Virus record (IMG/VR): IMGVR_UViG_3300046003_007892
Location: 124,001 to 188,000 of that record
Direction: 5' to 3' (one strand)
Length of the DNA stretch: 64,000 bases
Positions 952-57,924 of this stretch are shown here, piece by piece (position 1 is the first letter of the stretch; each line of letters opens with the position of its first letter). The position numbers and the translations under genes are program-made. The notes below the pieces were generated by a model. The model did no database searches and was not told where the DNA came from. It saw nothing but the letters and a program-made list of their open reading frames with translations.

Positions 952-1263
952 TTAAGCGGTCGGCTCGGTGGTGATCTTCACGCTATGCTGGCCGTGTTGG
1001 GCGCAGAAAGCGGTAGCGCGATCAACGCGCTGGTTTGCGACTTCACGGGGGTAGGTCCCCACGGTGGCGCGCTTCTTGTCCTGAATGGTCGCCGCCAGGG
1101 ACTTGGCCTCGGAGGCTTCCTTGTAGAAGATGGCCGCCAGCAGGGCGATCAGGAACTGCGGCGGCGCCGGGGTTCCATCCTCATTGTGAACGATGACGCG
1201 CCACAGCTTCGGCATCGAGAGCCGTTGCTTGGTACGGGATTCGGTCATCGTATCGTCGGACAA
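952..1263 (-). CDS. clpS: ClpS-like protease adaptor (divergent)
   Basis: PKLWRVIVHNEDGT...IF...A...ATVGTYPREVA...KITTEP follows the ClpS pattern; start could be ATG 1248. Confidence 0.8.
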   Translation of the reverse strand: MSDDTMTESRTKQRLSMPKLWRVIVHNEDGTPAPPQFLIALLAAIFYKEASEAKSLAATIQDKKRATVGTYPREVANQRVDRATAFCAQHGQHSVKITTEPTA

Positions 1264-1320
1264 GGGACACCTCTGAAAAACTTGAAATCAGAGCATGACC
1301 CCAAAACGCGATTTGGTCAA

Positions 1321-1352
1321 CTAAAAAAGACGGCCCCGAGAGGCCGCCTCCT
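1321..1352 (-). terminator. Intrinsic terminator after rpsU
   Basis: Minus strand GGCGGCC-tctcgg-GGCCGTC followed by T6. Confidence 0.85.
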
Positions 1353-1579
1353 TATGCGTTCTCGGCAGCGAGACGCTTGGCTTTGGCGACCCGGCGCGTG
1401 CCTTCGGCTGCCTTGCGACGACGAACCGTGGACGGTTTCTCGAAGAATTGGCGAGCACGAATTTCCTTGAGAATGCCCTCTTGCTTGACCTTGCGGTTCA
1501 GCAAACGGATGGCCTTCTCAATGTTGTTGTTGCGGACTTCGACCAGAAGGCCCCGCTTTTCAAAAGACTTTACAGCCAC
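1352..1579 (-). CDS. rpsU: Ribosomal protein bS21
   Basis: VEVRNNNIEKAIRLLNRKVKQEGILKEIRARQFFEKPSTVRRRK; GGAG SD; GTG start. Confidence 0.95.
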   Translation of the reverse strand: MAVKSFEKRGLLVEVRNNNIEKAIRLLNRKVKQEGILKEIRARQFFEKPSTVRRRKAAEGTRRVAKAKRLAAENA

Positions 1580-1620: not shown

Positions 1621-1650
1621 ATTATAGGTCTTTACTGTATTGGTTGTCAA
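1621..1650 (-). promoter_or_regulatory. Sigma70-type promoter for rpsU
   Basis: TTGACA-N18-TATAAT on minus strand. Confidence 0.8.
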
Positions 1651-1653
1651 ATA

Positions 1654-2190
1654 TTATTGATGGCGTTCTTTGTAGATGTCAGCCTTCGACTTGACCGGAG
1701 CCAGGACGGCTTGCATGTCGCGACCACCATCGGCGAGGGGTTTGTCGAGCTTGTGCTCTCCGACCATCCCAAGGAAGGAATCGACTGTCGCTCGACCGAT
1801 ATCCTTGTGGGCCCGTTCGCGGCCACGGAAGCGGACCACGATCTTGACCTTGTTGCCTTCAGCGAGGAACCCTGCGGCCCGCTTCGCCTTGACGAGAAGA
1901 TCGTTGTCGTCGGTGCCCGGCCGTAGCTGAACTTCCTTGACCTCAATCGTTAGCTCCCGCTGGCGGCGGGCAAGCTCTCGCTCCTGTTTCTTTTTCTCGA
2001 AGACAAACTTCCCGGCGTCCATGATGCGGCAGACCGGGATATCCCCGCTCCCGATTTGAACAACGTCAAGGCCTTGGTGGCGGGCACTGTTGAGGGCTTC
2101 CTTCAACAGATACACACCCATCTGCTTGCCGCTGTCATCTACCAACCGGACCTTCAGGGCCCGGATTTTATCATTCACGAATACGCTCAC
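1654..2190 (-). CDS. infC: Translation initiation factor IF-3
   Basis: VNDKIRALKVRLVD...VCRIMDAGKF...KEVQLRPGTDDND...NKVKIVVRFRGRE; GTG start. Confidence 0.97.
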   Translation of the reverse strand: MSVFVNDKIRALKVRLVDDSGKQMGVYLLKEALNSARHQGLDVVQIGSGDIPVCRIMDAGKFVFEKKKQERELARRQRELTIEVKEVQLRPGTDDNDLLVKAKRAAGFLAEGNKVKIVVRFRGRERAHKDIGRATVDSFLGMVGEHKLDKPLADGGRDMQAVLAPVKSKADIYKERHQ

Positions 2191-2198
2191 GCGAGAGT

Positions 2199-3479
2199 TT
2201 AGCTTTCTACTACGACTGGGGTTGGGGTTGGCTCCACCGGCTTAGTCGGCCCAGTCGGGGAGTGTTCGAGGTGCGGTTGCTCGTGATTGGTCACGACGCC
2301 CTCGTGGACCCGAACCGTTCCGACGCCGTCGTTGCGGAGATCGGGAAGGCGGAACTGGGTCTTCATCAGGATAGTTTCGATGACGCTGCGGAGGCCGCGT
2401 GCGCCGGTCTTTTGGTCGATGGCCCGCTTGGCGATAGCCAGGAGGGCGTTGTCTTCGAAGACGAGATCGACTTCGTCGATCTTGAACAGCTTGGCGAACT
2501 GACGGATGACCGCGTTCTTCGGCTTGGTGAGGATGTGGACCAGTTGCTCCTCAGAGAGTTCATCGAGCACGGCGATGACCGGTAGGCGGCCAACCATTTC
2601 AGGGATGAGGCCGAACTTGACGAGATGGCTGGGCTGGATGTGGACCATGACTTCCGACAGCGGGCGATTGCCCTTGGCGCCGACGTTTGAAGCCGAGAAC
2701 CCGATGGTCGCGCCGGATTTCTCCATGTCCTTCTGAACGACCTTGTCGAGACCGACGAAGGCGCCGCCAACGATGAACAGGATGTTCTTGGTGTTGATCT
2801 TGATCATCGTGTGGTTGGCATTCTTCTTGCCACCCGAAGGAGGAACGTAAACTTCCGAGCCTTCGATGATCTTCAGCAGGGCCTGCTGCACGCCCTCGCC
2901 CGACACGTCGCGCGTTCCTGAGCCGCCAGCTTCCTTGGCTTTTTTCTTGTCGATCTCGTCGATGTAGATGATGCCCCGCTCGGCTTTCTCGACGTCGTGG
3001 TTGCACGACTGAAGGAGACGAGTGATGATCGACTCGACGTCGTCACCCACGTATCCGGCTTCGGTCAGCGAGGTCGCATCGGCGATGGCGAACGGGACGT
3101 CCAGGTAACGGGCGATGGACTGGGCGATCAGAGTCTTGCCCGAGCCAGTCGGGCCCAGCAAGAGGATGTTGGATTTTTCGATTTCGACGTCGTCGATGAT
3201 CGGATATTCAAGACGCTTGTAGTGGTTGTAGACCGCTACGGCGAGGGTCTCTTTGGCCGAATCCTGGCCGATGACGTATTGGTCGAGATGGTCTTTGATT
3301 GTCTGAGGGGTGGGGAGGGATTTCTTTTCCACCTCTTCGTTGGATTTGACCGTCTCGTTCATGACGGAGAGGCAAAGGTTTACGCACTCATCACAGATAT
3401 AGACACTGGGTCCGGCGATCAACTTTTTCACTTCCGTTGCGCTCTTCGAGCAGAAGGAGCAGTGCAGGGAATCAGACAT
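2199..3479 (-). CDS. clpX: ClpX AAA+ unfoldase
   Basis: Zn finger CSFC..ICDEC, Walker [36 protein letters not shown] loop, TGARGLR. Confidence 0.98.
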
Positions 3480-3546: not shown

Positions 3547-4752
3547 CTAGGACGGGTCATTATCCCGTGGTTGAAAGTTTTCAGCCGTAAGCCACCCAGT
3601 ATCGACCATTTCTTGCTCAGATTTGTCGCTTTCGTGAACGGCGGCGACAATTTCTTCCAGGAGGTGAGGATTGTTTTCCAGGATGGTAAGCACCTGTTCC
3701 TTGGCCGATACTGAACTTTCTTCGGCAACTGTGGACTGAATTTCCGGCTCAGCTTCGGGTGTGTCCGCTACCGTATCGTCTTGACTCGCCAGAGCTTCTT
3801 TGGCAGCGATTTCAAAAATCGATGGTTCCTGGAGGAATGCCGATAGGCGTTCGTTCGGTGCCGGGACGAGTGGGATGACATCCTCGTAGGAAACCGGTCG
3901 TTCATCTTCCGGGATGAAGTCGTCCTCTGGGGAATCTTCTTCGATGACATCGGTCTCGCTGAGGTCTTCCTCGACTGGTTCCTGAACGGCTTCCACGACC
4001 ACCGGCTTCGGTTGGCGAGAACGTGACCATTCTCCAAGCGTGATCGTGCCTGAGATCATCAGGACGATAGCCAGAGGGTCGAAGGCGAACATCAGTGTTC
4101 CGATGACGGCTTGAACGGCTGCCGTGGGGTCTTTGAAGCCCATGGTGGTCAGGGGGCCCAGCTTGGCGGTGGCGGCGTTGGCCTGACTCCGCAAAGGTGC
4201 CATCTCGACGTTCTTGGCGGTGATCTGCGCGTTCAGGGCGGCGATCTCTCTGGAGATGCGATCACGGTCCCGGCGTTGTTGGCTCATGAACGTCGTTGCG
4301 CCCCTGGCCGAGCCGCCCGCAAGATAGGTGTCCACGGTCTTGTTGATGTTGGCTTGCTGGCGTTCCAGTTCCGTCCGTTGGGCGAGCAACTGGTCAAGTT
4401 GAGCCTGATGACTTTCAACCTGCATCGTGATCTCGGCCGCAGGCGCCTTCTGGTCGAGATGGGCCTTCATCAGATAGCCGTAGATGCCCAAGCTCGTGAT
4501 CAGCATCAGGGCGATGACCGCTGCGCAGAGGTAGAAGCGGTGGAACTTGCTGACGAGGGGGTTCTTCCAGTTGGAATGGACCCAACCCGCAGCGACGAGC
4601 TTGCTGACTTCGAGGACGACGCCCATGATGGCGACCGGCAAGAATGCAGCCGAGAACAAAGCAGCCAGTCCGACCACGCTGAAATAAGCCGCAACAGCGG
4701 AGATCGCCACGGCACAAAACAGGGTCAAGGACCCGACGAGAAGTTTTTGCAA
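3547..4752 (-). CDS. Membrane protein with coiled coil and acidic tail
   Basis: N-terminal hydrophobic helices, Q/E-rich heptads, further TM segment, D/E-rich C-terminus; start uncertain. Confidence 0.75.
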   Translation of the reverse strand: MQKLLVGSLTLFCAVAISAVAAYFSVVGLAALFSAAFLPVAIMGVVLEVSKLVAAGWVHSNWKNPLVSKFHRFYLCAAVIALMLITSLGIYGYLMKAHLDQKAPAAEITMQVESHQAQLDQLLAQRTELERQQANINKTVDTYLAGGSARGATTFMSQQRRDRDRISREIAALNAQITAKNVEMAPLRSQANAATAKLGPLTTMGFKDPTAAVQAVIGTLMFAFDPLAIVLMISGTITLGEWSRSRQPKPVVVEAVQEPVEEDLSETDVIEEDSPEDDFIPEDERPVSYEDVIPLVPAPNERLSAFLQEPSIFEIAAKEALASQDDTVADTPEAEPEIQSTVAEESSVSAKEQVLTILENNPHLLEEIVAAVHESDKSEQEMVDTGWLTAENFQPRDNDPS

Positions 4753-4756
4753 AGGT

Positions 4757-5143
4757 TTAGCCTTCTTTCACCAAAGTCAGGCCATGCTCACGATCAAGGA
4801 ACTTGTATTCAACCTTGACTGTCTCAAACACGCCTAGAGCTTCGATCACCATATCTGTGTCTAGCTCAGAGCAGGTGTAAAGATCAAATTGAAGAACAGC
4901 CGGAACGCATTCGTCCCATGAGTGCATGCCGATGTGGCTAGTCTCAATGATGGCGTCGGCGGTCAGTCCACGATTACCTTCTACTGGACAATAACGTGCA
5001 CGCGGCGCGGCGAGTTCTTTCATCCCGATATCCTTGATCAGCTTGGACATCCAAGCACAAACAGCGGCAATGTCCTTCTCCAGCGGAGGATTCATGACCT
5101 CGGCGCGGACAATGAGGTGTTGGTGGCGGTTATCGGGTGTCAT
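4757..5143 (-). CDS. speD: Pyruvoyl-dependent AdoMet decarboxylase-like proenzyme
   Basis: IIETSHIGMHSWDE...FDLYTC matches the ESH.S.HTWPE...DxFTC pattern. Confidence 0.85.
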   Translation of the reverse strand: MTPDNRHQHLIVRAEVMNPPLEKDIAAVCAWMSKLIKDIGMKELAAPRARYCPVEGNRGLTADAIIETSHIGMHSWDECVPAVLQFDLYTCSELDTDMVIEALGVFETVKVEYKFLDREHGLTLVKEG

Positions 5144-5862: not shown

Positions 5863-7731
5863 ATGACAACGACCAAAGAGTGGAAAAAGCTCAGCCCATA
5901 TCAACAAGCCCGCCAACGGACAGAGATGTGGCTAGGCTCACGCGACCCCCATACGCAATCCATTCTCGAATATACCGAGGATGGACCGGTCTCGGTTTCG
6001 ACGACCTGGGTCCCGGCCCTGTTCACCGCGTTCCGCGAACTCTTCGACAACGCTCTCGACGAAGTCGTCTCGCACGGCAACGGTGACCGCATCGACGTCA
6101 GCTATGATGAGACCAGCAAGGTGTTCAGCATCCGAGACAACGGACGCGGTGTCCCCATCGAATGGGACGAGACCGAACAGAAATATGCCGCCACCGTCCT
6201 CCTATCTGAGCAGAACGCGGGACGGAACTTCGAGGATGACCGTGGTGCGACTCGCGGTCTGAATGGCGTCGGCGGCGCCGTGGTCAATTTCACCTCGGAA
6301 TATTTCCTCGCACACATCATTCGTGGCGGTCAGTCCTTCACCCAGAGGTTCGTCGAAGGTTTGGAGCACGTCGCCGAAGACCCCGTCATCCTTCCGGCCA
6401 AGAAATCCGACGTCAACGGGACCCGCATCGAGTTCAAGCTCTCGAAGAAAGTCTTCAAGGACATGCGCCTGCCCGAATCGTTCATTCGTTCGCGAATGTT
6501 CGAGGCCGCCCTCTGCTACCCGAATCTCAAGATTTTCTACAACGGCAAGCAGGTGAAAACGCGCGGCGTCGAGAAAGACCTGTTCCCGAAAAGGAAGCCC
6601 ATCACGGTCGAGATCGACGAGCCCGGTTTCCGCTCACGCTTCTGGTTGGTCCCGCAGTTCTTTGCCGATGGAACCGAGACCTCCCACAGTCTCGTCAACG
6701 CCATCCCGATGTTCAATGGCGGCGTGCACATCGACACCTTCAAGCGGATGTTCTTCTCCGGGCTCATCAACGCGCTGGCCAAGGAATCGAAAAAGCGCAA
6801 GCTGACGCCGAACCGCTCCGACCTCGCGGACGGAATGCTGATCTACAACATCACCGAGATGGATGCCCCGCATTTCGACAGCCAGTCGAAGACCCGAGTC
6901 ATCAACGAAGGGGTGAACAAGATCGTCACCGCCGCGCTCGACAACCCGGATTTCTTCAAGAACGTCATCCGCAAAAATGGTGAATGGATTGAGGACGTCT
7001 ACAAGCGGTGCGCCGAGCGGACCCTGAAGAAAGAATCGTCGGAAATCTCCAAGCTGGCCAAGAAGGGCGGCAAGGTCCGCGTGGCCAAACTCAAGGACGC
7101 CACCCACTCCGACCGCCAGCAGTGCAGCCTCTACATCACCGAGGGCGATTCGGCCGTTGGTGGTCTCGTCGATGCCCGCGACGCCCGCATCCATGCCGCC
7201 ATGCCCCTGAAGGGGAAGGTGATGAATGTGCACGGCATGTCGCCCAAGCAGATTTACGAGAACGAAGAACTGGCCAGGATGATGAACGCCATCGGGCTCG
7301 TGCCCGGCCAGCGCGTGAACCGCCATCTGCTCCGCTATGGCCGCGTCTACATCACCTGCGACGCCGACGAGGACGGTAAGTCGATCACCGGCCTGCTGAC
7401 CAACTTCTTCTACCTGAACTGGCCGGAGCTTTTCGAGGCCGACCGCCCGTTCATCCACGTCTTCGACACCCCGCTCATCATTGCGGCGAAAGGCAAAGAG
7501 CGGAAGTATTGGTACGCCGACAATGAGCACACGTTCAAGCAGGAAGATTTCAAGGGCTGGGAGATCACCCGTGCCAAGGGTCTGGCCCAGTTGAAGAAAC
7601 CGGACTGGCAGTTCGCGCTCAATAATCCGAAGTCCATCCCGCTCACCGATGACGGCGACCTCAATGCCGCCTTGTCACTGATCTTTGACCCCAAAAAAGC
7701 CGACGCCCGCAAAGAGTGGATTGGCATCTAA
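5863..7731 (+). CDS. DNA topoisomerase II large (ATPase+TOPRIM) subunit, T4 gp39/60-like
   Basis: FRELFDNALDE, DNGRGVP, GLNGVG, EGDSA, PLKGK, DADEDG. Confidence 0.97.
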   Translation: MTTTKEWKKLSPYQQARQRTEMWLGSRDPHTQSILEYTEDGPVSVSTTWVPALFTAFRELFDNALDEVVSHGNGDRIDVSYDETSKVFSIRDNGRGVPIEWDETEQKYAATVLLSEQNAGRNFEDDRGATRGLNGVGGAVVNFTSEYFLAHIIRGGQSFTQRFVEGLEHVAEDPVILPAKKSDVNGTRIEFKLSKKVFKDMRLPESFIRSRMFEAALCYPNLKIFYNGKQVKTRGVEKDLFPKRKPITVEIDEPGFRSRFWLVPQFFADGTETSHSLVNAIPMFNGGVHIDTFKRMFFSGLINALAKESKKRKLTPNRSDLADGMLIYNITEMDAPHFDSQSKTRVINEGVNKIVTAALDNPDFFKNVIRKNGEWIEDVYKRCAERTLKKESSEISKLAKKGGKVRVAKLKDATHSDRQQCSLYITEGDSAVGGLVDARDARIHAAMPLKGKVMNVHGMSPKQIYENEELARMMNAIGLVPGQRVNRHLLRYGRVYITCDADEDGKSITGLLTNFFYLNWPELFEADRPFIHVFDTPLIIAAKGKERKYWYADNEHTFKQEDFKGWEITRAKGLAQLKKPDWQFALNNPKSIPLTDDGDLNAALSLIFDPKKADARKEWIGI

Positions 7732-7734
7732 GAC

Positions 7735-9078
7735 ATGAAAACTTCAGAATATATTCTCAAGACCAACCGCGAATATTCCCTCTACGTCTGCTCGCAGCGG
7801 GCCATCCCCAATATCGAAGACGGGCTCAAACCCTCTCAGCGGATGCCGTTGTGGCTGCTGCGGAACAAGGCCGGGAAGATCAAGGTCTCGGCTCTCTCGG
7901 GCATGCTGGCGGCCGAGAAAATCTACAATCACGGTGAGATGTCGGCCAACAACGCCATCTCCCTCCTGGCGGCGCCGTTCAAGAACAACAACTGCCTCAT
8001 CGAAGGCGTCGGTATGTTCGGCAGCCGCGTGGTTCCCGATGGCATCGGGGCCCCTCGTTATGTCGAGGTCGCCCGTGCCGCCATCTCAGAGAAGGTTCTC
8101 TACCGGGACCTCGATCTCGTTCCCCAGACGGAGAACTACGACGCTTCGACCATGCAGCCCATCCACATGCTGCCCATCATCCCTCTGGTGCTCCTCAACG
8201 GCATTGAGGGCATCGCGGTCGGTTGGTCCACCTCCATCCTGCCCAGGTCTCTGAAGGCCATCGTAGACGCCAGCATCGCCGCCCTTGAAGGCAAGAAGAT
8301 CAAGACCCTGGTGCCCCACTACGGCCGGTATGACGTCAGCGTCGCGCCTCTGGCCGTCAACCAGTGGGAAATCCGTGGCAAGGTCAAGATCGAAGACACC
8401 TCGACGATTCGCGTCACCGAGCTTCCTCCGGGCCTGCACGTCGAGAACTTCCTCAAGCGTCTCGACGAGATGGAAGACCGCGATCAGATCACCGGCTTCA
8501 CCGACAACTCATCCGAGGCCATCGACATCGTCGTCCGTTTCAAGCGCGGCACCCTGAAAGCATGGGACGAGGAGTCGGCCATCGACTTCCTCAAGCTGAA
8601 GGAGAAAGTCACCGAGCGCATCACCGTCGTCGATTTCGGCGGGCAGTCCATCCGCACCTATGAGAATGCCGAAGAGGTCGTCAAGGCTTTCGTCCAGTGG
8701 CGTCTGGGTTGGTATTCAAAGCGGTTCGACAAGATGCTCGCCGACGCCGTCTATGAGGTCAACTACTGGCGAGTCCTCAAGGCCCTGTTCGATGACGGCT
8801 TCACCAAACGACTCGGCACGTTCGCCGACAGGTCAGCCGTTGAAGCCGACGTCGAAAAGGTCTCGAAGAAGGTTAAGCTCAACCTGGACGCCAAGCAGTT
8901 GGACCGTGTCGTCAACCTCCCGACCTACCGGTGGACGAAGGCGTTCGAGGCCGACGTGGATGCCAAGATCATCGACATCGACGGGGCCATCTCCGACTAT
9001 CAGGCCATTCTGTCATCGCCGGACCTCCTCAAGTCCGTCTACGCGGGGGAACTCGACGAACTGCGGAAGAAAATCTGA
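7735..9078 (+). CDS. DNA topoisomerase II breakage-reunion subunit, T4 gp52-like
   Basis: RAIPNIEDGLKPSQR, YNHGEMS, GAPRY (catalytic Tyr), LLNGIEGIAVGWST; no CTD. Confidence 0.97.
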   Translation: MKTSEYILKTNREYSLYVCSQRAIPNIEDGLKPSQRMPLWLLRNKAGKIKVSALSGMLAAEKIYNHGEMSANNAISLLAAPFKNNNCLIEGVGMFGSRVVPDGIGAPRYVEVARAAISEKVLYRDLDLVPQTENYDASTMQPIHMLPIIPLVLLNGIEGIAVGWSTSILPRSLKAIVDASIAALEGKKIKTLVPHYGRYDVSVAPLAVNQWEIRGKVKIEDTSTIRVTELPPGLHVENFLKRLDEMEDRDQITGFTDNSSEAIDIVVRFKRGTLKAWDEESAIDFLKLKEKVTERITVVDFGGQSIRTYENAEEVVKAFVQWRLGWYSKRFDKMLADAVYEVNYWRVLKALFDDGFTKRLGTFADRSAVEADVEKVSKKVKLNLDAKQLDRVVNLPTYRWTKAFEADVDAKIIDIDGAISDYQAILSSPDLLKSVYAGELDELRKKI

Positions 9079-15654: not shown

Positions 15655-15730
15655 GCGTCGTTAGCTCAGATGGTAGAGCATCGGCTTCTAACACCGAGGG
15701 TCACGGGTTCGAGTCCCGTCCGACGCGCCA
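15655..15730 (+). tRNA. tRNA with CUA anticodon (amber suppressor candidate)
   Basis: 76 nt; D stem GCTC/GAGC; anticodon stem TCGG/CCGA with C31-A39 mismatch puts CTA at 34-36 (15688-15690); T arm ACGGG/CCCGT; G73, encoded CCA. Confidence 0.85.
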
Positions 15731-17055: not shown

Positions 17056-17146
17056 GCGAGGGTGCCAGAGCATTCAAATGGGCCGGACTGCAAATCCGGT
17101 GGAGCCAATAACTCCTACGAAGGTGCGAATCCTTCCCCTCGCTCCA
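17056..17146 (+). tRNA. tRNA-Cys(GCA) with long variable arm (class II / Tyr-like scaffold)
   Basis: Acceptor GCGAGGG/CCCTCGC, U73, CCA; CCGGA-CTGCAAA-TCCGG; V-arm GGAG-ccaataa-CTCC; T arm GAAGG-TGCGAAT-CCTTC. Confidence 0.88.
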
Positions 17147-49640: not shown

Positions 49641-49844
49641 ATGATCGATTGTCTGCATCGTCCCGCGCCCTTCCACCGCATCCTCGTGGACGGCGTCATA
49701 GGCGTCATCCACAAGATCACCCATGGCCCAAAAAACACTAGACTTATCGTAGTGGTTGTGGGTAAAACAGAGCTTACAATTCCCTTCGCGGCCCTTGCTT
49801 GGGACGCGACGAATGCGCTCTGGAGACCTTTGTGCACGATCTGA
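49641..49844 (+). CDS. Possible small hypothetical protein
   Basis: Follows TTGACG-N17-TACCAT; overlaps the serS start. Confidence 0.35.
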   Translation: MIDCLHRPAPFHRILVDGVIGVIHKITHGPKNTRLIVVVVGKTELTIPFAALAWDATNALWRPLCTI

Positions 49845-51151
49845 AAGCAATCACGTCTGACCCCGAAGCATTCATCACCCGGTCGTTGGGTCGAGTGGAT
49901 GCCCAAAGGGTCAAGCAGATTGCCGAACTTCATAGTGGCGCCAAGACTCATCTTCGCATCGTCGAAGAGGCCGCAGCAAACATAAAGCATCTGAGCCGTC
50001 AGATTGGCCCTCTGATGCGAGACCCCGTCGCCAACGCAGAGCAGATCGCGGAACTCAAGTCCCAGGTCGCCGGGTTCAAGGACGCCGAGGTGCGCTCGGC
50101 CGCCCATCACGAAAAGCTCGAAGAAGCGGCACAGGCCGCTGCTCTGGCACTCCCCAACCTGCCCGCGCCAGACGTCCCATTCGGCGTTGGTGAGGAAGAC
50201 AACGTCCAGACCGCAATCTGGGGCGATCTACCCGTGATCGCCAACCCGCTCGATCACGTCGCCATCGGCGAGCGTCTCGGGATGGATTTCGAACAGACGG
50301 TCAAGATGTCGGGCTCGCGCTATGTCACCCTGCGGGGCTCTCTGGCCCGACTGGAACGCGTGCTCGGGCAGTTCATGCTAGACACCCACGTCGCCAACGG
50401 TTGGGAAGAGGTCACGCCACCCCACATCGTCAAGCCCGACGCCATGTTGGGCACGGGTCAGCTTCCCAAGTTTGGCCACGACATGTTCCATACCGGAGAG
50501 ACTGATCTCTGGACCGAGGACACCCGTTTCCTTATCCCGACCGCCGAGGTCTCCCTGACCAATCTGGTCCGCGAAACCCTGATGGACGCGGAACCCCAGC
50601 ACCGCATGGTTGCCCTGACGCCCTGCTACCGCCGCGAAGCTGGTTCGTCGGGTCGTGACACCAAGGGGATGATTCGCCTCCACCAGTTCAACAAGGTCGA
50701 GTTGGTTTCGGTCGTCGCCGCCGAGCATTCGGAAGCCGAACATATCCACATGCTGGAAGCCGCCGAAGGCATCCTGCGTCTGCTCGGCCTGCCGTTCCGC
50801 CGCATTCTCCTGTGCAGCGGTGACATGGGCTTCTCGGCTCGCAAGACGTTCGATCTCGAAGTTTGGGTCCCGAGCCAGGACACCTATCGGGAGATTTCGT
50901 CGATTTCGAACTGCGGTGACTTCCAAGCTCGCCGCATGGATGCTCGCTGCCGTCGCGGGAGCCGGTCGGACCCGCACCGCAAGGGAACTGACTTCGTCCA
51001 TACCCTCAACGGGTCTGGCGTCGCTGTTGGCCGCGCCCTCGTGGCCATTCTGGAAAACTATCAGGAGCCGGACGGCAACGTCCGCATCCCTGGCGTCCTG
51101 CAAGATCGTCTCGGTGGTGCCGAACTCCTCACCCCGGAAGGTTTCAAATGA
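49832..51151 (+). CDS. serS: Seryl-tRNA synthetase
   Basis: GTG-HDLKAI start with GGAG SD; LIPTAEV, CYRREAGS.GRDT.GMIR.HQF.KVE, EISSISNC.DFQARR, HTLNGSG.AVGR. Confidence 0.98.
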   Translation: MHDLKAITSDPEAFITRSLGRVDAQRVKQIAELHSGAKTHLRIVEEAAANIKHLSRQIGPLMRDPVANAEQIAELKSQVAGFKDAEVRSAAHHEKLEEAAQAAALALPNLPAPDVPFGVGEEDNVQTAIWGDLPVIANPLDHVAIGERLGMDFEQTVKMSGSRYVTLRGSLARLERVLGQFMLDTHVANGWEEVTPPHIVKPDAMLGTGQLPKFGHDMFHTGETDLWTEDTRFLIPTAEVSLTNLVRETLMDAEPQHRMVALTPCYRREAGSSGRDTKGMIRLHQFNKVELVSVVAAEHSEAEHIHMLEAAEGILRLLGLPFRRILLCSGDMGFSARKTFDLEVWVPSQDTYREISSISNCGDFQARRMDARCRRGSRSDPHRKGTDFVHTLNGSGVAVGRALVAILENYQEPDGNVRIPGVLQDRLGGAELLTPEGFK

Positions 51152-51312
51152 GTGAAGACGAAACGCTGACCGAGGACGTCAAGCGCGCATATCAGATTTC
51201 TCGTAATTCCACTGGTTTCTCTGGCGATGCCTTGGCGTCAGTGGTGGCTGGTGTTTTGACCGTCATGGCGATCAACCGTCTCACACAGGCGATTCAAGAC
51301 CGTGAGGAATAG
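51148..51312 (+). CDS. Small hypothetical protein
   Basis: ATGA coupling to serS. Confidence 0.5.
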   Translation: MSEDETLTEDVKRAYQISRNSTGFSGDALASVVAGVLTVMAINRLTQAIQDREE

Positions 51313-51547
51313 CGTCCCGCACGACAAGCTCTCGCCGGGCTTCTGGTATATCCATATCGACGTCAAACCCTTTTATTCTATCGTGGAAATCACGCGAGAT
51401 ATCACCGGGTTCACCAACACCGGAGAGATCATCTTCGGTGATTTGGTCGTGTGGTCCATGGACCATGAAGGCAATCACGAACTCGGGGCCTACTGCCCTG
51501 ACCAGTTCATCGGTCTCGTTCCCGCCCCTCTGCAAGCAATGCCATGA
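51302..51547 (+). CDS. Hypothetical protein
   Basis: Overlap-coupled. Confidence 0.55.
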   Translation: MRNSVPHDKLSPGFWYIHIDVKPFYSIVEITRDITGFTNTGEIIFGDLVVWSMDHEGNHELGAYCPDQFIGLVPAPLQAMP

Positions 51548-51717
51548 GAAACATTCTCGAATACCCCATCACCGACGAGGAAATGCTCAACGCCATCGAC
51601 CGTGCAATTTCGGAGGTCGATTTCAGCACGCTCGCCATGGGGGACATGCATTTGGCTTCCCTTCACGCCGCGCGCGCCCGCCTTCTCGCGACCTTTGAAG
51701 TTCCTCCTTCAATTTAG
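51544..51717 (+). CDS. Small hypothetical protein
   Basis: ATGA coupling; YPITDEEML. Confidence 0.5.
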   Translation: MRNILEYPITDEEMLNAIDRAISEVDFSTLAMGDMHLASLHAARARLLATFEVPPSI

Positions 51718-51751
51718 TTGACGAAAAAATGAAAGACGGTAGTTTGTCAGG

Positions 51752-53548
51752 ATGGATTTCCTGCCCTCTGCCGCTCTTCGCTCCTGGCCGCATCGCCAAG
51801 CCATCGACGTTCTGCGTCACGTCGTAAAGACGCGCCTGCCGAGTGCTGCTCTGAAGGACGCTATGGCCCTGCTGTCGCAGGGTCGGGTCGAGGAACTCAT
51901 CACTGCGTTCCCGGCACTGTCCGGGCGTCAGGTCACCTTCCAGACCGGCTACGGCCCTTCGGGTGCCCCGCACATCGGCACCTTCGCTGAAGTCGTGCGG
52001 ACCTCGTGGGTCCAGCACGCTTTCCGGCACCTGACTGGAGACCGCATCAAGACTGCCCTCTACGTCGTCAGCGATGACTTCGATGGTTTCCGCAAGGTTC
52101 CCGATGGTCTCCCGGCGTGGATGGAAGAGGATTTCGGAAAGCCCCTGACGAGCGTTCGGGACCCCGATGACATCTATGAGAGCTTCGGCGCCGCGAACAA
52201 CGCCAAGCTCCGTGCGTTCCTGGCCAACCTCGGCATCGAACATTTCTTCGTCTCGGCGACGCGGGCGTATGACTCCGGCGTTTTCAACGACGAACTCCTC
52301 AACGTCTTCGATCATCACGACGCCATCCTGGACATCATTCTCCCGACGCTTGGCGAAGAGCGGCGCGCGACTTACTGCGCCTTCATGCCCCTCTCGCAGG
52401 AGGGGCGTCTGCTCCAGACCGGAACCCGTCTATCGCAAAACCATCGCGGCTTGCTCCTCTACGATGACCGGTTCGGCTGCCAGACCGGCAACGTGGTCAC
52501 GGATGGCAACGCCAAGCTTCAATGGAAGGTCGATTGGGCCATGCGTTGGGCTGCGCTCGGCACCGACTACGAAATGTCGGGAAAGGACTTGATCGAGTCG
52601 GTCAAGATCGGCAACCAGATCGTGCGCGTTCTGGGCAGCCAACCGCCCGTGCAGATGACCTACGAGATGTTCCTCGACGAGAATGGCGAGAAGATCAGCA
52701 AGTCGCGGGGCAACGGCCTCTCGGTTGAGCAATGGCTCCGCTATGGCTCGCGCGAGGGTCTGTCCTACTTCATGTTCGGCAACCCCACGGCGGCGAAGAA
52801 GCTCCACGTTGGCGTCATCCCACGCGCCGAGGACGACTATCTCGAAGACCTGGAAGCAGTCACGCCGGATTCGCCGTCGTGGCATATCCACCGAGCCGCC
52901 CCGCCCGCGCCGCTCACCACCGAAACCTCCTACGCGATGTTGGTCAACATGGCGTCGGTTTCGCGCGCCCCGGACCCCGGCATCCTCCTCCAGTATCTGA
53001 GCCAGAATCGTCCCATCGCCGAGGAAGAGATCGCCCGCGTCCATGCCCTGGCGCAGACGGTGGTCAACTACTGTGCTGGTGAGGTCTATCCGCACATGAA
53101 GCCCCGCGTGGCGACCAAGATGGAGAAGGTTGCCCTCTACGAATTCGCCTATGAACTCGAACAGATGGCCGATGGCCTCACGGCTGAGGAATACCAGACG
53201 GTCGTCTACGAGGTAGGCAAGACGCGGGGCTATGCGGACGACCTCCGTGCATGGTTCCGGGTCATCTATGAGACCGTCTTCGGTTCCGAAGAGGGCCCGC
53301 GCATCGGAGCGTTCATCTGTGCCATCGGCCGCCTGAACGCCATCTCGCTTTTCAACGGCGTGCCGATGGCTCGCGACCCCTTCATTGGTCGCAACCCCAC
53401 CGAGGTGCGCGCGTGGGAGATCGCCCGCGAGGCGCACGGCCCAGATATCCCGAGCCCGCACGAAGGCATGCCGCCCTCGGTGTGGTGCGCATTCGTGGCT
53501 GCCGCCGAGAAGGAACTCGGGCTGAGCAAGGAAATCGGAAATGCTTGA
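51752..53548 (+). CDS. lysS: Class I lysyl-tRNA synthetase with C-terminal extension
   Basis: TGYGPSGAPHIGT, SDDFDGFRKVP, KLQWKVDWAMRW, GKDL, KISKSRGNG, GPRIGAF. Confidence 0.97.
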   Translation: MDFLPSAALRSWPHRQAIDVLRHVVKTRLPSAALKDAMALLSQGRVEELITAFPALSGRQVTFQTGYGPSGAPHIGTFAEVVRTSWVQHAFRHLTGDRIKTALYVVSDDFDGFRKVPDGLPAWMEEDFGKPLTSVRDPDDIYESFGAANNAKLRAFLANLGIEHFFVSATRAYDSGVFNDELLNVFDHHDAILDIILPTLGEERRATYCAFMPLSQEGRLLQTGTRLSQNHRGLLLYDDRFGCQTGNVVTDGNAKLQWKVDWAMRWAALGTDYEMSGKDLIESVKIGNQIVRVLGSQPPVQMTYEMFLDENGEKISKSRGNGLSVEQWLRYGSREGLSYFMFGNPTAAKKLHVGVIPRAEDDYLEDLEAVTPDSPSWHIHRAAPPAPLTTETSYAMLVNMASVSRAPDPGILLQYLSQNRPIAEEEIARVHALAQTVVNYCAGEVYPHMKPRVATKMEKVALYEFAYELEQMADGLTAEEYQTVVYEVGKTRGYADDLRAWFRVIYETVFGSEEGPRIGAFICAIGRLNAISLFNGVPMARDPFIGRNPTEVRAWEIAREAHGPDIPSPHEGMPPSVWCAFVAAAEKELGLSKEIGNA

Positions 53549-55870: not shown

Positions 55871-55900
55871 CCCATCTGATCTAAGAAAGGTCCCTTGAAC

Positions 55901-57064
55901 ATGTCCGAACCCAAGCCCGTCAAAATCACTCCGACGCCGTCACGCAAGAAAGCCGAAACGCCCTCCGTGCAGCAGGCCACCATCCTGGCTGAAATCCCGG
56001 TCGCGGCCCCGCCCGCTCCGCCCATCCTGTCAGTGGCGCCGACCCGCTCAGCGGTCGCGGTCCAGCAGGCCCCGCTGTCCATCACGGAAATCTCCCAGAT
56101 GGGCGGAACCACGCTGGTCAAGACGGCGGCCATCTCGGGCAAGATCACGTCCGTCGCCAAGGCTGGCGACATGGACGAACTCGGCAAGCTGGTCGGCCAA
56201 CTCCTCATCAAGGCGAAGGAATACGACCCGAGCAAGCTCGGCAAGGGCGGCATTCTGGGCTGGTTCCGCAAGTCCAAGCAGCAACTGCTGAACCACTATC
56301 AGACCGTGGACCAACAGGTCGGCGGCCTCGTCATCGAAGTCGATAAGCGTGTCGGCTTCTTCCGTGGTCGCGTCGCCGATCTGGAAGAGATGTTCAACGC
56401 CAACGAAGAATATCACGAGGAACTCGGTCAGACCATCGCGGCCATGCAGGAGCGCGTCGAGTGGATGCGCAGCAACCAGCCGGTCGTGGACGAGGCCGAC
56501 GCCTTCTCGGCGCAGAAGGCCGCCGACTGGCAGCAGGTGATCACCTTCGCCGAGAAGCGCATCGACGACCTGAGGCGCGGGCAGATGCTGTCCGAGCAAA
56601 CCGGGCCGCAGATCAAGCTGATGGCGATGAACTCCATCGCGCTGTCGCAGACGTTCGACGACATCAAGGTCACCACCATCCCGACCCTGCAACGGACGTT
56701 CGCCCTCTACATCATTAACAAGGAACAGCAGCAAGGCGCGGACATGGCGGAGGCGGTGCGCAACACCACCAACGCGGCCATCATCCAGAACGCCGACCTG
56801 TTGAAGTCCAACACGTCCAAGGTCCACACTCAGCTTTCCAGGTCGAACATCGACATGAAGACGCTGGAGCACAACCAGCAGGCCGTGTTCGATTCCTTGA
56901 AGGAAGTCGAACGCATCCGCGCCGAAATGAAGTCCCGGCTGCAATCGGAGGCACCGAAGATCGAACGCCTGTCGGCCGATCTTCACACCCGCATGGCCGA
57001 GTATGGCCGCGCTCTGCCGGGCGGCAACTCCGCCAAGCAGATCGAACAAACCGCGACCTTCTAA
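55901..57064 (+). CDS. telA: TelA/KlaA-family toxic anion resistance protein
   Basis: Long helical ORF; GWFRK...YQTVDQQV...FAEKRIDDL...QIKLM..N..L...F...TIP. Confidence 0.85.
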   Translation: MSEPKPVKITPTPSRKKAETPSVQQATILAEIPVAAPPAPPILSVAPTRSAVAVQQAPLSITEISQMGGTTLVKTAAISGKITSVAKAGDMDELGKLVGQLLIKAKEYDPSKLGKGGILGWFRKSKQQLLNHYQTVDQQVGGLVIEVDKRVGFFRGRVADLEEMFNANEEYHEELGQTIAAMQERVEWMRSNQPVVDEADAFSAQKAADWQQVITFAEKRIDDLRRGQMLSEQTGPQIKLMAMNSIALSQTFDDIKVTTIPTLQRTFALYIINKEQQQGADMAEAVRNTTNAAIIQNADLLKSNTSKVHTQLSRSNIDMKTLEHNQQAVFDSLKEVERIRAEMKSRLQSEAPKIERLSADLHTRMAEYGRALPGGNSAKQIEQTATF

Positions 57065-57076
57065 GGGAAACCCAGA

Positions 57077-57829
57077 ATGCCCATCGAACTCGACAAGAAA
57101 GCCGAAACCGTTCAGCGCGTGCTGCTCGACAAGGGCTTGGCCACGGCGCCGACCATGCGTGTCGCCGTCGCCATCGACATCTCCTACTCGATGAAGGATG
57201 AATTCGAGGACGGCAGCGTCCAGAAAGTTCTCGACCAGCTTCTCGGCGTCGCCAAGACGTTCGATGATGACGGCGCCTTCGACATGTGGCAGTTCGACGA
57301 CCGCACCGATTACATCGGTCAGGCGTCGGAAGCCGACTACGGCACCTACGTGCGGTCCAAGCGTCTGGGCGTCCGGGGCGGCACCCTCTACTCGCCGTGC
57401 CTGCGCGATATCACGTCGCGGATGTTCGGCGCGGCGCAGACCCAGACGACCACCCAGAAGAAGGGCGGCTTCCTCGGCTTCGGCGCCAAAACCGTGCAGC
57501 AGACGGCGAACATCGGCGGCTCCGACGAGCCCGTCATGGTCCTGTTCATCACGGACGGGGCCCCGCAGGAAACCATCTCGGCTGTCCGGGCCGTGCTGAA
57601 GGACGCGCAGAAGCACAACATCTACTTCCAGATGATCGGCATCAACAACCAGGGAGAAGAGTTCGAGTTGCTCTCGACCCTGGCCGACGAGCTTCCCAAC
57701 GTCGGCTTCGTCAAGATGAACGGCTTCCGCAACACCGACGAGCAACTCTATCGCGCCATGATCACCGACGAACTCGTCGCGTGGGTGTCGAAGTTCGCCA
57801 CGTCGGCTGCGAAACCCGCCGTCGCCTGA
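57077..57829 (+). CDS. Ter-associated vWA protein
   Basis: AIDISYSM, FDDDG, GGTLYSP, FITDG, IYFQMIG. Confidence 0.88.
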   Translation: MPIELDKKAETVQRVLLDKGLATAPTMRVAVAIDISYSMKDEFEDGSVQKVLDQLLGVAKTFDDDGAFDMWQFDDRTDYIGQASEADYGTYVRSKRLGVRGGTLYSPCLRDITSRMFGAAQTQTTTQKKGGFLGFGAKTVQQTANIGGSDEPVMVLFITDGAPQETISAVRAVLKDAQKHNIYFQMIGINNQGEEFELLSTLADELPNVGFVKMNGFRNTDEQLYRAMITDELVAWVSKFATSAAKPAVA

Positions 57830-57924
57830 TTCACCCTGCCGGGGGCGGGCAGCCGCCCCCGGTTCCTTCTCTGCTCAAAGAGTGCATTTCTAGAAAAGGG
57901 GCCCAAGTGCCGCAACGATCTTTC

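What the first reader, a model, noticed from the sequence alone, without database searches (positions are those of the whole stretch)
2199..3479. ClpX with rewired substrate-recognition loops but intact ClpP-docking loop
Seen: RKH loop reads GGKKN; pore-2 loop reads [13 protein letters not shown] instead of RKSDNPSITRD; GYVG and IGF are retained. Established: in E. coli ClpX the RKH and pore-2 loops set ssrA-tag specificity. Inference: a phage unfoldase that docks on host ClpP and redirects degradation, possibly of defence or cell-cycle proteins.
Basis: partly seen in the sequence, partly recalled or inferred. Interest (0 to 1): 0.6.

Follow-up and report, generated by a model that had tools for sequence, protein, structure and literature searches.

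The report
Megaphage ClpX with remodelled entry loops
A giant lake-water phage encodes a complete ClpX unfoldase, with its own ClpP protease elsewhere in the genome; two of the loops that choose substrates have changed in a way shared by about a hundred related phage genes but by none of the 105 bacterial genes examined, so the enzyme probably degrades a different set of proteins.

Summary
Window 2199-3479 (-) encodes a 426-aa ClpX (NCBIfam equivalog, 581 bits against a cut-off of 359). The zinc finger, Walker motifs, pore-1 GYVG and the ClpP-docking IGF are intact. The RKH motif reads KKN, and the centre of the pore-2 loop reads GGSG where E. coli has NPSI.

This is not chance. All 105 bacterial ClpX checked are canonical. 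About 99 metagenomic or megaphage ClpX (60-71% identical to this one) form one clade with a new conserved consensus: GSG(S/T)RD and (K/R)K(N/S/G)P, never His. Of 125 positions conserved elsewhere, only four are replaced in that clade, and two of them lie in these loops.

- The phage has its own ClpP with an intact catalytic triad, about 10 kb away. All five complete relatives carry ClpP and a ClpA-like gene, so host ClpP need not be involved.
- Four of the six known ssrA-contact residues are kept.
- The proposed substrates are untested.

The gene also sits in a conserved megaphage cassette: clpX, then infC (IF3), rpsU (S21) and clpS.

Best reading: a phage-borne ClpXP protease with an altered axial gate and altered specificity. 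I rate it a new variant of a known kind, of moderate interest.

The parts
2199..3479 (-). clpX coding sequence, 426 aa
   Evidence: ORF. NCBIfam ClpX equivalogs score 581.5 and 558.3 bits (cut-offs 359 and 371). Pfam finds zf-C4_ClpX, AAA_2 and ClpB_D2-small. E = 2e-143 to E. coli ClpX in the PDB.
3354..3464 (-). N-terminal C4 zinc-binding domain (residues 6-42)
   Evidence: PF06689, E = 1e-16. C7, C10, C29 and C32 are invariant in 40 relatives.
3132..3155 (-). Walker A motif GPTGSGKT (residues 109-116)
   Evidence: Read directly. G109, G112, G114, K115 and T116 are invariant and P110 and T111 nearly so in alignment A1.
3045..3056 (-). Pore-1 loop GYVG (residues 142-145; E. coli Y153 and V154 kept)
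   Evidence: Y is kept in 100% and V in 99-100% of all groups.
2907..2945 (-). Pore-2 loop [13 protein letters not shown] (residues 179-191). E. coli I189-S-R-K-S-D-N-P-S-I198 is replaced by [10 protein letters not shown]; T199, R200 and D201 are kept.
   Evidence: Alignment to 8e91_A. Column statistics: P196 becomes G in 67% of the derived clade, I198 becomes G in 64% (Ile 0%), and T199 is S or T in 82%.
2820..2834 (-). RKH-loop equivalent GGKKN (residues 216-220): R228 becomes K, K229 stays K, H230 becomes N
   Evidence: His is present in 100% of 75 bacterial and 54 RKH-type phage ClpX, and in 0% of 96 derived-clade sequences (N 42%, S 31%, G 16%).
2697..2705 (-). IGF tripeptide of the ClpP-docking loop (residues 259-261)
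   Evidence: In the derived clade the first position is I, M, L or V, G is 100% and F is 99%.
2727..2729 (-). D251, at the position of E. coli R261 (base of the IGF loop); a clade-signature replacement
   Evidence: Arg in 100% of bacterial and 94% of RKH-type phage ClpX, 0% in the derived clade.
2625..2627 (-). H285, at the position of E. coli D294; a clade-signature replacement
   Evidence: Asp in 100% outside the derived clade; His in 96% of the derived clade.
1654..2190 (-). infC (IF3), 8 nt after the clpX stop codon, probably co-transcribed
   Evidence: IF3_N plus IF3_C. TIGR00168 scores 157 bits. In relatives L179 and L180 it overlaps clpX by 8 nt.
1352..1579 (-). rpsU (ribosomal protein S21)
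   Evidence: PF01165, E = 9e-19. TIGR00030 scores 70.6 bits.
1621..1650 (-). Sigma-70 consensus promoter TTGACA-18-TATAAT just upstream of rpsU
   Evidence: 12 of 12 consensus positions matched.
952..1263 (-). Divergent clpS-like adaptor gene
   Evidence: PF02617 scores 45.4 bits (cut-off 23), but it falls below the NCBIfam equivalog cut-offs. Aligned to E. coli ClpS: N34, D36, T38 and E79 are kept; D35 becomes E, H66 becomes Q, K84 becomes R.
3547..4752 (-). Conserved upstream gene: 401-aa protein of unknown function with a hydrophobic N-terminus and an acidic C-terminal half (both read by eye from the sequence)
   Evidence: No Pfam or PHROG match. 35% identical (E = 1e-80) to the gene at the same position in L179.
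4757..5143 (-). AdoMet-decarboxylase-like gene, the first gene of the conserved same-strand block
   Evidence: PF02675, E = 1.3e-9. Same position in L179 and L180.

Best explanation
This is the ATPase of a phage-encoded ClpXP protease. The 426-aa ClpX keeps everything needed to form a hexamer, burn ATP, grip a polypeptide (GYVG) and dock on a ClpP ring (IGF). Its most likely partner is the phage's own ClpP, encoded 10.3 kb away, though host ClpP could also serve.

The gene belongs to a phage-specific ClpX lineage that travels as a cassette: clpX, infC (IF3), rpsU (S21) and clpS. Within that lineage one sub-clade, including this gene, has remodelled the mouth of the axial channel in two ways. 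The His of the RKH loop is lost, though two basic residues remain. The rigid N-P-S-I centre of the pore-2 'plug' has become a Gly-rich G-G-S-G.

Inference from E. coli biochemistry: H230A raises the KM for ssrA substrates more than 100-fold, and deleting NPS opens the channel, which slows GFP-ssrA degradation and speeds degradation of degron-less unfolded proteins. The phage enzyme should therefore bind ssrA-type tags weakly and have a more flexible gate. That would shift it to other degrons or to loosely folded proteins during infection.

Shown here: the gene, its motifs, the clade-wide conservation of the new loop consensus, the phage ClpP, and the synteny. Inferred: binding to ClpP, altered specificity, and co-expression with IF3.
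For: - Family membership and motifs.
- Phage ClpP: matches PF00574 at E = 1.7e-81 and E. coli ClpP at E = 1e-80; Ser97, His122, Asp171 and the N-terminal loop are kept.
- Relatives: five of five complete related megaphages (342-607 kb, CheckV 97-100%) have ClpP and a ClpA-like ORF of 743-792 aa.
- Bacterial loops: canonical in 75 distinct sequences plus 30 more. No bacterial ClpX exceeds 60% identity to the query.
- Trees: a phage clade of 179 rows (support 99) contains a nested 99-row clade (support 96), and 97 of those 99 carry both derived loops (FastTree). With the loop columns removed, IQ-TREE (LG+C20) still recovers the derived rows as one clade (45 rows plus 2 intermediates, SH-aLRT 90). 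Its sister is RKH-type phage ClpX.
- The new consensus is conserved rather than decaying: G186 67%, S187 71%, G188 64%, S/T189 82%, R/K190 99%, K/R218 100%, K219 86%, P221 72%.
- Only 4 of 125 otherwise conserved positions are replaced in the derived clade: I198, H230, R261 and D294.
- His-to-Asn also arose separately in other phage ClpX (Atu_ph07 L100, L086, L133, L146, P0072), and in none of the bacterial ones.
- Functional meaning of the residues: PMC7652416 and PMC10638403.
- Cassette: 41 of 43 IDKK-type IMG/VR loci have IF3 and/or S21 directly downstream. The nearest relatives L179 and L180 share the full synteny.
Against: - There is no biochemical or expression evidence. No RNA run holds the locus.
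- The complex prediction for ClpX with phage ClpP gave no answer.
- Four of the six ssrA-contact residues (Y, V, T, V) are kept, along with both basic RKH residues, so recognition of C-terminal Ala-Ala tags may persist. A related phage with derived loops (G002) even encodes a tmRNA whose tag ends in -MAA.
- The effect of His-to-Asn or of NPSI-to-GGSG has not been measured; only H230A and the NPS deletion have.
- The bacterial sample does not cover every phylum (Bacillota, Actinomycetota and Bacteroidota were not sampled here).
- The phage ClpP is so like bacterial ClpP that partner choice cannot be read from sequence.
Confidence: 0.55

Rival explanations
1. One reading: the phage ClpX is a stand-alone hijacker. 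It docks on the host's ClpP and redirects it to host defence or cell-cycle proteins.
For: IGF is intact. Phage and bacterial ClpP are about 63-68% identical, with similar N-terminal loops, so cross-docking is plausible. The phage ClpP is 10 kb away, not in the clpX operon.
Against: The phage has its own intact ClpP, as do five of five complete relatives. A phage that only needed host ClpP would have no reason to keep one. There is no evidence on the targets.
Confidence: 0.15
2. Same job, different spelling. The enzyme simply adds ordinary ClpXP capacity (ssrA and quality-control clearance) during the burst of phage translation, and the loop changes are neutral or compensated.
For: Y153, V154, T199 and V202 equivalents and two basic RKH residues are kept. 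T199S costs only about 4-fold in E. coli. The gene sits next to the translation genes IF3 and S21. Relative G002 carries a tmRNA with an AA-ending tag.
Against: H230 is invariant in all 105 bacterial and 54 RKH-type phage sequences, yet is never His in 96 derived sequences. The replaced positions are concentrated in the two specificity loops (4 of 125) and have a new conserved consensus. H230A raises the KM more than 100-fold.
Confidence: 0.2
3. ClpP-independent remodeller. ClpX works alone as an unfoldase or chaperone for phage replication (it lies beside the topoisomerase II genes) or for virion assembly, as suggested for Atu_ph07, AP-J-162 and jumbo phages in general.
For: Topoisomerase II subunit genes lie at 5863-9078, next to the block. 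The same adjacency was noted in PMC6102473 and PMC11242549. ClpX and ClpP were detected in the virion proteome of phage G (PMC12484599). E. coli ClpX remodels MuA without ClpP (established knowledge).
Against: The IGF motif is under strict conservation across the whole phage clade, and ClpP is present in every complete relative. Both argue that proteolysis is the selected activity. The two roles are not mutually exclusive.
Confidence: 0.07
4. Subunit poisoning. The phage ClpX co-assembles with host ClpX into mixed hexamers and so alters or blocks host ClpXP specificity.
For: It is 52-60% identical to bacterial ClpX across the whole AAA+ module, including the interface regions.
Against: There is no direct evidence. 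The presence of a phage ClpP, and the conserved new loop consensus, fit an autonomous enzyme better.
Confidence: 0.03

Closest known systems
Bacterial ClpX (E. coli ClpX, P0A6H1; structures 8e91, 6wrf)
   Same: Same domain order (C4 zinc finger, large and small AAA+ domains). Same Walker A and B motifs, GYVG pore-1 and IGF loop. T199, R200, D201 and V202 are kept. The loop lengths are identical. Roughly 57% identity (estimated by eye from the printed alignment).
   Different: RKH reads KKN (H230 lost). The pore-2 centre NPSI reads GGSG, and I189 is K. R261 and D294 are replaced. There is a Pro/Thr-rich C-terminal tail. The gene is not in the bacterial clpP-clpX arrangement seen in the bacterial-type loci (ClpP directly upstream); it lies in a phage clpX-infC-rpsU-clpS block.
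ClpX of cultured jumbo phages (Agrobacterium phage Atu_ph07 gp2; Sinorhizobium phages Phosso and AP-J-162; Bacillus phage G gp258)
   Same: Phage-encoded ClpX next to IF3 and topoisomerase genes. Those genomes also carry ClpP, ClpA and ClpS. Atu_ph07 ClpX falls in the same 127-row phage clade, has IDKK, and has already lost His (RKN).
   Different: Identity is only 53-60%. Atu_ph07 lies outside the derived sub-clade and its pore-2 loop reads KAKKAEGTSASRD, not the Gly-rich GSG form. The published descriptions are annotation only and do not mention the loops.
Human mitochondrial ClpX (CLPX)
   Same: [quoted passage not shown] This is a precedent that these two loops set specificity.
   Different: Human ClpX also has Leu at the T199 position, whereas the phage protein keeps Thr. 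Different lineage: the phage protein sits inside the bacterial-type ClpX radiation.
Engineered E. coli ClpX with the NPS deletion (open-channel variant; PMC10638403)
   Same: The same three central pore-2 residues (N195-P196-S197) are the ones altered. The phage has G-G-S there, followed by G in place of I198.
   Different: The phage change is a substitution of equal length, not a deletion. Whether it opens the channel is unknown.

Membership tests
ClpX (AAA+ unfoldase of ClpXP) | Full-length match to curated ClpX equivalog models, above their cut-offs | tested here: met
   NF003745 scores 581.5 bits (cut-off 359). TIGR00382 scores 558.3 bits (cut-off 370.75). HslU scores only 201.7 bits, below its cut-off.
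ClpX (AAA+ unfoldase of ClpXP) | N-terminal C4 zinc-binding domain | tested here: met
   PF06689, E = 1e-16, residues 6-42. The four Cys are invariant in relatives.
ClpX (AAA+ unfoldase of ClpXP) | Walker A, Walker B and pore-1 GYVG | tested here: met
   GPTGSGKT at 109-116, DEID at 174-177, GYVG at 142-145.
ClpX (AAA+ unfoldase of ClpXP) | IGF tripeptide loop for docking on ClpP | tested here: met
   IGF at 259-261. G is 100% and F is 99% conserved in the derived clade.
ClpX (AAA+ unfoldase of ClpXP) | RKH motif in the channel-entry loop, said to be conserved specifically in the ClpX family (bioRxiv 10.64898/2026.07.31.739446) | tested here: not met
   The motif reads KKN. His is 0% in 96 derived-clade sequences, against 100% in the bacterial ones.
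ClpX (AAA+ unfoldase of ClpXP) | Canonical pore-2 loop (I-S/A-R-K-x-x-N/S-P-S-I-T-R-D) | tested here: not met
   Only T-R-D (followed by V) is kept. The ten residues before it are replaced, with GGSG at the centre.
ClpX (AAA+ unfoldase of ClpXP) | Physical and functional partnership with a ClpP tetradecamer | tested here: inconclusive
   A ClpP gene with an intact catalytic triad is present in the same genome. The complex prediction gave no answer. Actual binding cannot be tested with these tools.
ssrA-tag-recognising ClpX (E. coli type) | The six residues critical for ssrA binding: Y153, V154, T199, V202, R228, H230 (PMC7652416) | tested here: inconclusive
   Y, V, T and V are kept. R228 becomes K. 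H230 becomes N. The consequence for binding has not been measured.
Megaphage clpX-infC-rpsU(-clpS) cassette (defined in this work) | IDKK-type ClpX followed on the same strand by IF3 and/or S21, with ClpS a few kb further on | tested here: met
   In the window, clpX (2199-3479), infC (1654-2190), rpsU (1352-1579) and clpS (952-1263) are all on the minus strand. 41 of 43 IDKK-type IMG/VR loci have the cassette. L179 and L180 have it too.
ClpS (N-degron adaptor of ClpA/ClpC), for the neighbouring gene 952-1263 | ClpS fold, plus the N-degron pocket residues N34, D35, D36, T38 and H66 and the ClpA-binding residues E79 and K84 (E. coli numbering; the residue roles are from memory of the ClpS literature) | tested here: inconclusive
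   Pfam ClpS scores 45.4 bits (cut-off 23), but the match is below the NCBIfam cut-offs. N34, D36, T38 and E79 are kept. D35 becomes E, H66 becomes Q, K84 becomes R, and there is a 2-aa insertion. Relative L179 keeps NDD and H. No ClpA was found in this 45%-complete fragment, but one is present in all five complete relatives.

The most novel reading that the evidence does not exclude
A large clade of megaphages has evolved a ClpXP whose axial gate is deliberately loosened or re-aimed: a Gly-rich pore-2 plug and no RKH histidine. This ClpXP would be expressed together with phage IF3 and S21 as part of the takeover of host translation. It might clear host ribosome-bound or loosely folded host proteins, or phage early proteins, rather than ssrA-tagged products. 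If so, it would be a natural 'open-channel' ClpX and a link between phage-directed translation and phage-directed proteolysis.
Probability: 0.2. Interest if true: 0.75.

Novelty: new variant of a known kind. Interest (0 to 1): 0.5.

Why it matters
ClpX is the textbook model for how an AAA+ protease chooses its substrates. The RKH and pore-2 loops are the elements that mutagenesis and cryo-EM have tied to that choice.

In every bacterial ClpX looked at here these loops are essentially frozen. A natural radiation of about a hundred phage ClpX carries a different, conserved loop consensus, while the motor and the ClpP-docking parts stay intact. It therefore offers a ready-made natural experiment on gate and specificity design.

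It also shows that some of the largest phages carry a whole Clp system of their own (ClpX, ClpP, ClpA, ClpS). The ClpX gene is wired to phage translation-factor genes rather than to clpP. This suggests that these phages manage protein turnover themselves, and not only protein synthesis.

The practical value is modest until the substrates are known.

Tried and rejected
- Complex prediction (two copies of phage ClpP plus ClpX residues 55-405): the verdict was 'no answer'. It is not used as evidence either way.
- ClpS as an adaptor for this ClpX, an idea raised because no ClpA is in the fragment: dropped. All five complete relatives encode a ClpA-like protein with a Clp_N domain, so ClpS most likely serves a phage ClpA that lies in the missing half of this genome.
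- A link between the loop change and a phage-encoded tmRNA tag:
  - No tmRNA or SmpB was found in the own fragment.
  - Hits to RF00023 in the relatives are all below the cut-off and are mostly tRNAs.
  - The one real candidate, a two-piece tmRNA in G002, has a tag ending in -MAA, which is canonical.
  - No support.
- A phage-encoded SspB adaptor: none found in the own fragment or in four complete relatives.
- Co-evolution of the ClpP N-terminal loops or docking pocket with the changed pore-2 loop: the six phage ClpP look canonical, and there are too few for statistics.
- Near-identical phage records: megablast of 12 kb against 50,697 phage records found nothing.
- Expression evidence: none of the sequencing runs found to hold this stretch is on record as RNA.
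- The bacterial-type loci in IMG/VR (IDKI, with ClpP directly upstream; 8 loci) were set aside as probable host flanks or misclassified fragments.
- The spatial relation of R261 and D294 could not be examined, because no structure coordinates are available to scripts.
Full report
**1. What is at 2199-3479**

The minus strand carries a 426-aa ORF. It starts at an ATG preceded by AAGGA.
- It matches both NCBIfam ClpX equivalog models far above their cut-offs: 581.5 bits against 359, and 558.3 against 371. The next family, HslU, stays below its own cut-off.
- Pfam finds the ClpX C4 zinc finger, AAA_2 and the small D2 domain.
- Against solved structures the best match is E. coli ClpX (8e91), at E = 2e-143 over residues 5-405.

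In that alignment E. coli numbering is query numbering plus 10 across the loops of interest. Reading it gives:

| Element | Query residues | Reading |
|---|---|---|
| Pore-1 | 142-145 | GYVG (Y153 and V154 kept) |
| Pore-2 | 179-191 | [13 protein letters not shown], against E. coli ISRKSDNPSITRD |
| RKH loop | 216-220 | GGKKN, against GGRKH |
| ClpP-docking loop | 259-261 | IGF |

The loops have the same length as in E. coli.

**2. Is it more than chance, and is it real DNA?**

*Bacterial ClpX are canonical.*
- A pattern-seeded scan of one genome per bacterial species returned 80 loci, with at most 59% identity to the query.
- The 79 ClpX I could extract (75 distinct) come from Nitrospirota, Pseudomonadota, Desulfobacterota, Synergistota, Myxococcota, Spirochaetota and Cloacimonadota. 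All read IDKI(S/A/T)RK..(N/S)PSITRD and GGRKHP.
- An even sample of 201 Pseudomonadota genomes gave a ClpX in 197, with at most 60% identity to the query. All 30 loci fetched were canonical.

*The closest relatives share the odd loops.*
- The closest proteins in the 5.8-billion-protein collection are 60-71% identical. Many sit on contigs of 170-607 kb.
- They share the odd loops: IDKK, then a Gly-rich stretch ending in GSG(S/T)RD, and (K/R)K(N/S/G)P with no histidine.

*The DNA is reproducible.*
- Contigs from independent lake-water metagenomes (X4, X5, X6) reproduce the RKH-equivalent and IGF codons without a single difference.
- The only difference inside the pore-2 codons is a synonymous change in K179 in run X2, which may be the source sample.

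The feature is therefore real and non-random.

**3. Context: a megaphage with its own Clp system**

The window is bases 124001-188000 of a 240,363-bp IMG/VR virus record that CheckV rates as about 45% complete. That implies a genome of roughly half a megabase.

The window also holds:
- a T4 gp15-like tail-sheath stabiliser, a seryl-tRNA synthetase, a class-I lysyl-tRNA synthetase, TelA and TerC;
- 2 of the record's 24 tRNA genes.

The sequence recurs in lake-water metagenomes.

Crucially, the same record encodes a ClpP (G000:C1:115269-115898, minus strand), 10.3 kb from clpX.
- It matches PF00574 at E = 1.7e-81 and E. coli ClpP at E = 1e-80.
- It keeps Ser97, His122, Asp171 and the N-terminal LVPMV...RGERS loop.

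Five complete relatives carry a related ClpX: G001 to G005, 342-607 kb, CheckV 97-100%, two with terminal repeats, one of them Agrobacterium phage Atu_ph07.
- All five encode ClpP.
- All five encode a 743-792-aa ORF with a Clp_N domain, that is, a ClpA-like protein.

No ClpA, second AAA_2 protein, SmpB, SspB or tmRNA was found in the 240-kb fragment itself. With 55% of the genome missing, that says little.

**4. A conserved cassette**

On the same strand as clpX lie the following, in order:
- An AdoMet-decarboxylase-like gene (4757-5143).
- A 401-aa protein of unknown family (3547-4752). By eye it has a hydrophobic N-terminus and an acidic C-terminal half.
- clpX.
- infC (IF3, 1654-2190), 8 nt after the clpX stop codon.
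- rpsU (S21, 1352-1579), behind a perfect TTGACA-18-TATAAT promoter.
- A divergent clpS (952-1263).

Topoisomerase II subunit genes face the block at 5863-9078.

The two nearest relatives I looked up share the synteny. They are a 569,850-bp contig in NCBI assembly GCA_040384225.1 and a 171,789-bp JGI contig.
- Both have the order: topoisomerase, AdoMet_dc, a protein of about 460 aa, ClpX, IF3, S21, one variable gene, ClpS.
- In both, infC overlaps clpX by 8 nt.
- The upstream unknown protein is 35% identical to its counterpart in L179 (E = 1e-80).

Among 80 IMG/VR loci found with a ClpX profile, 41 of 43 with the phage-type IDKK signature have IF3 and/or S21 directly downstream. Eight loci with IDKI and ClpP directly upstream look like bacterial flanks.

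The adjacency of clpX to IF-3 and topoisomerase was noted for single phages (Atu_ph07, PMC6102473; AP-J-162, PMC11242549). I found no description of its breadth.

**5. Evolution of the loops**

A FastTree of 217 ClpX places the phage sequences in one clade.
- The phage clade has 179 rows (support 99).
- Inside it is a 127-row clade that includes Atu_ph07.
- Inside that is a 99-row clade (support 96), in which 97 rows have lost both RKH and S-I-T-R-D. The query sits in a 20-row sub-clade of it.

I rebuilt the tree with the loop columns removed and a site-heterogeneous model (IQ-TREE, LG+C20).
- The 45 sampled derived rows plus two intermediates (RKN but still SITRD) form one clade, with SH-aLRT support of 90.
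- The sister group is RKH-type phage ClpX.

Column statistics show a stepwise path:

| Group | Pore-2 loop | RKH loop |
|---|---|---|
| Bacteria | I-S-R-K-S-D-S/N-P-S-I-T-R-D | RKHP |
| RKH-type phage ClpX | K-x-K/R-K/R-G/S-E/D-x-x-S-I-T/S-R/K-D | RKHP |
| Derived clade | K-x-x-K/R-x-x-G-G-S-G-S/T-R/K-D | K/R-K-N/S/G-P |

- In the derived clade His230 is 0% and Ile198 is 0%, but the new residues are themselves conserved. The loops were re-specified, not lost.
- Of 125 positions held at 85-90% or more in both bacteria and RKH-type phage ClpX, only four are replaced in the derived clade: I198 (pore-2), H230 (RKH), R261 (just before the IGF loop) and D294 (His in 96%).
- His-to-Asn also arose separately in other phage ClpX (Atu_ph07, L086, L133, L146, P0072), and in none of the bacterial sequences.

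**6. What the changes should do (inference)**

*The ssrA-contact residues.*
- In the E. coli recognition complex the ssrA tag is held by Y153 and V154, by T199 and V202, and by R228 and H230.
- T199A/V, V202A and H230A raise the KM for GFP-ssrA from 1.3 uM to roughly 90-240 uM. T199S costs only about 4-fold.
- R228A shifts preference from ssrA toward an N-degron.
- Human ClpX has Leu at the T199 and H230 positions, ignores ssrA tags, and gains that activity with E. coli RKH and pore-2 loops (PMC7652416).

*The channel plug.*
- The channel of substrate-free ClpXP is plugged by a pore-2 loop.
- Deleting N195-P196-S197 destabilises the plug. It slows GFP-ssrA degradation and speeds degradation of degron-less non-native proteins (PMC10638403).

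*The phage protein.*
- It keeps Y, V, T and V, and two basic residues.
- It has Asn for H230, and G-G-S-G for N-P-S-I.
- I therefore expect weaker ssrA-type binding and a more flexible gate, with a shift toward other degrons or loosely folded proteins.

This is inference from E. coli mutants that are not the same substitutions. It is not shown.

**7. Partner**

IGF is kept, and it is under strict conservation in the whole clade. The phage and all complete relatives keep a catalytically intact ClpP. The most economical model is a phage ClpX with a phage ClpP.

Because the phage ClpP is 63-68% identical to bacterial ClpP, host ClpP could also be used. Sequence cannot decide this. The one complex prediction I ran returned 'no answer' and is not counted.

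**8. Literature**

Jumbo-phage ClpX, ClpP, ClpA and ClpS have been listed at annotation level:
- Atu_ph07, PMC6102473;
- a jumbo-phage survey, PMC7824862;
- phage G, with ClpX and ClpP in the virion proteome, PMC12484599;
- AP-J-162, PMC11242549.

The huge-phage survey PMC7162821 discusses S21, IF3 and tmRNA but not Clp. Full-text searches for phage-encoded or viral ClpX, ClpP or ClpXP phrases found nothing. None of the ClpX-loop papers retrieved concerns phage enzymes. I found no prior description of the loop divergence.

**9. Verdict**

- It is a phage ClpX with changed specificity loops and intact ClpP docking.
- The 'host ClpP' element is unnecessary, because the phage brings its own ClpP.
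- The loops are less completely rewired than claimed.
- The proposed targets are unsupported.

I class it as a new variant of a known kind, of moderate interest. The best follow-up is direct biochemistry and loop swaps.

Noticed in passing
window 15655-15730 (+): A tRNA with a CTA anticodon, a potential amber suppressor. ARAGORN labels it 'Pyl', and Rfam scores it as a tRNA at 57.7 bits. ORFs in the window read normally under code 11, so this suggests occasional TAG read-through rather than a recoded genome.
   Followed up: partly
window 1621-1650 (-) and about 1318-1345 (-): A perfect 12-of-12 sigma-70 consensus promoter (TTGACA-18-TATAAT) lies immediately upstream of the phage S21 gene. A GC-rich hairpin with a T-run follows the gene. 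S21 looks like a strongly expressed unit of its own, inside the clpX-infC-rpsU-clpS block.
   Followed up: partly
window 952-1263 (-): In the ClpS-like gene the N-degron pocket is partly replaced (D35 to E, H66 to Q, and a 2-aa insertion after T38-P39). The ClpA-contact Glu is kept. The ClpS of the related contig L179 keeps the canonical N-D-D and His. No ClpA was found in this 45%-complete fragment.
   Followed up: partly
window 3547-4752 (-): A 401-aa protein with no Pfam or PHROG family; by eye it has a hydrophobic N-terminus and an acidic C-terminal half. It is conserved at the same position, directly upstream of clpX, in relatives (35% identity, E = 1e-80 to L179:8539-9945).
   Followed up: partly
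window 2727-2729 and 2625-2627 (-): Two further clade-signature replacements lie outside the pore loops. The position of E. coli R261, at the base of the IGF loop, is D here and never R in the clade. D294 is His in 96% of the clade. They may be a coupled pair. Their spatial relation could not be checked.
   Followed up: no
window 49799-53548 and 55895-58989 (+): The phage encodes a seryl-tRNA synthetase and a class-I lysyl-tRNA synthetase, followed by TelA and a TerC/DUF475 membrane protein (tellurite-resistance-type genes).
   Followed up: no
L171:1512-2015 (G002, a 523,836-bp phage with terminal repeats): A related megaphage with derived-loop ClpX carries a permuted (two-piece) tmRNA candidate with the tag ANDNVFAMAA. 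That is the alphaproteobacterial type, a hint that this phage group infects Alphaproteobacteria.
   Followed up: partly
L100 (Atu_ph07), L086, L133, L146, P0072: Loss of the RKH histidine (His to Asn) has occurred several times independently in phage ClpX lineages outside the derived clade. None of the bacterial ClpX examined shows it.
   Followed up: partly
window 17056-17146 (+) and genome C1:40741-40829, 83023-83217: Several phage tRNA genes are unusually long (Cys 91 nt, Asn 89 nt, Lys 87-94 nt), which may reflect introns or long variable arms.
   Followed up: no
window 2772-3059: When metagenome contigs are laid on the locus, depth spikes and contigs break over the most conserved part of clpX (Walker B to pore-1). 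Fragments of other organisms' clpX map there. This is a reminder that this stretch is hard to assemble in metagenomes.
   Followed up: partly
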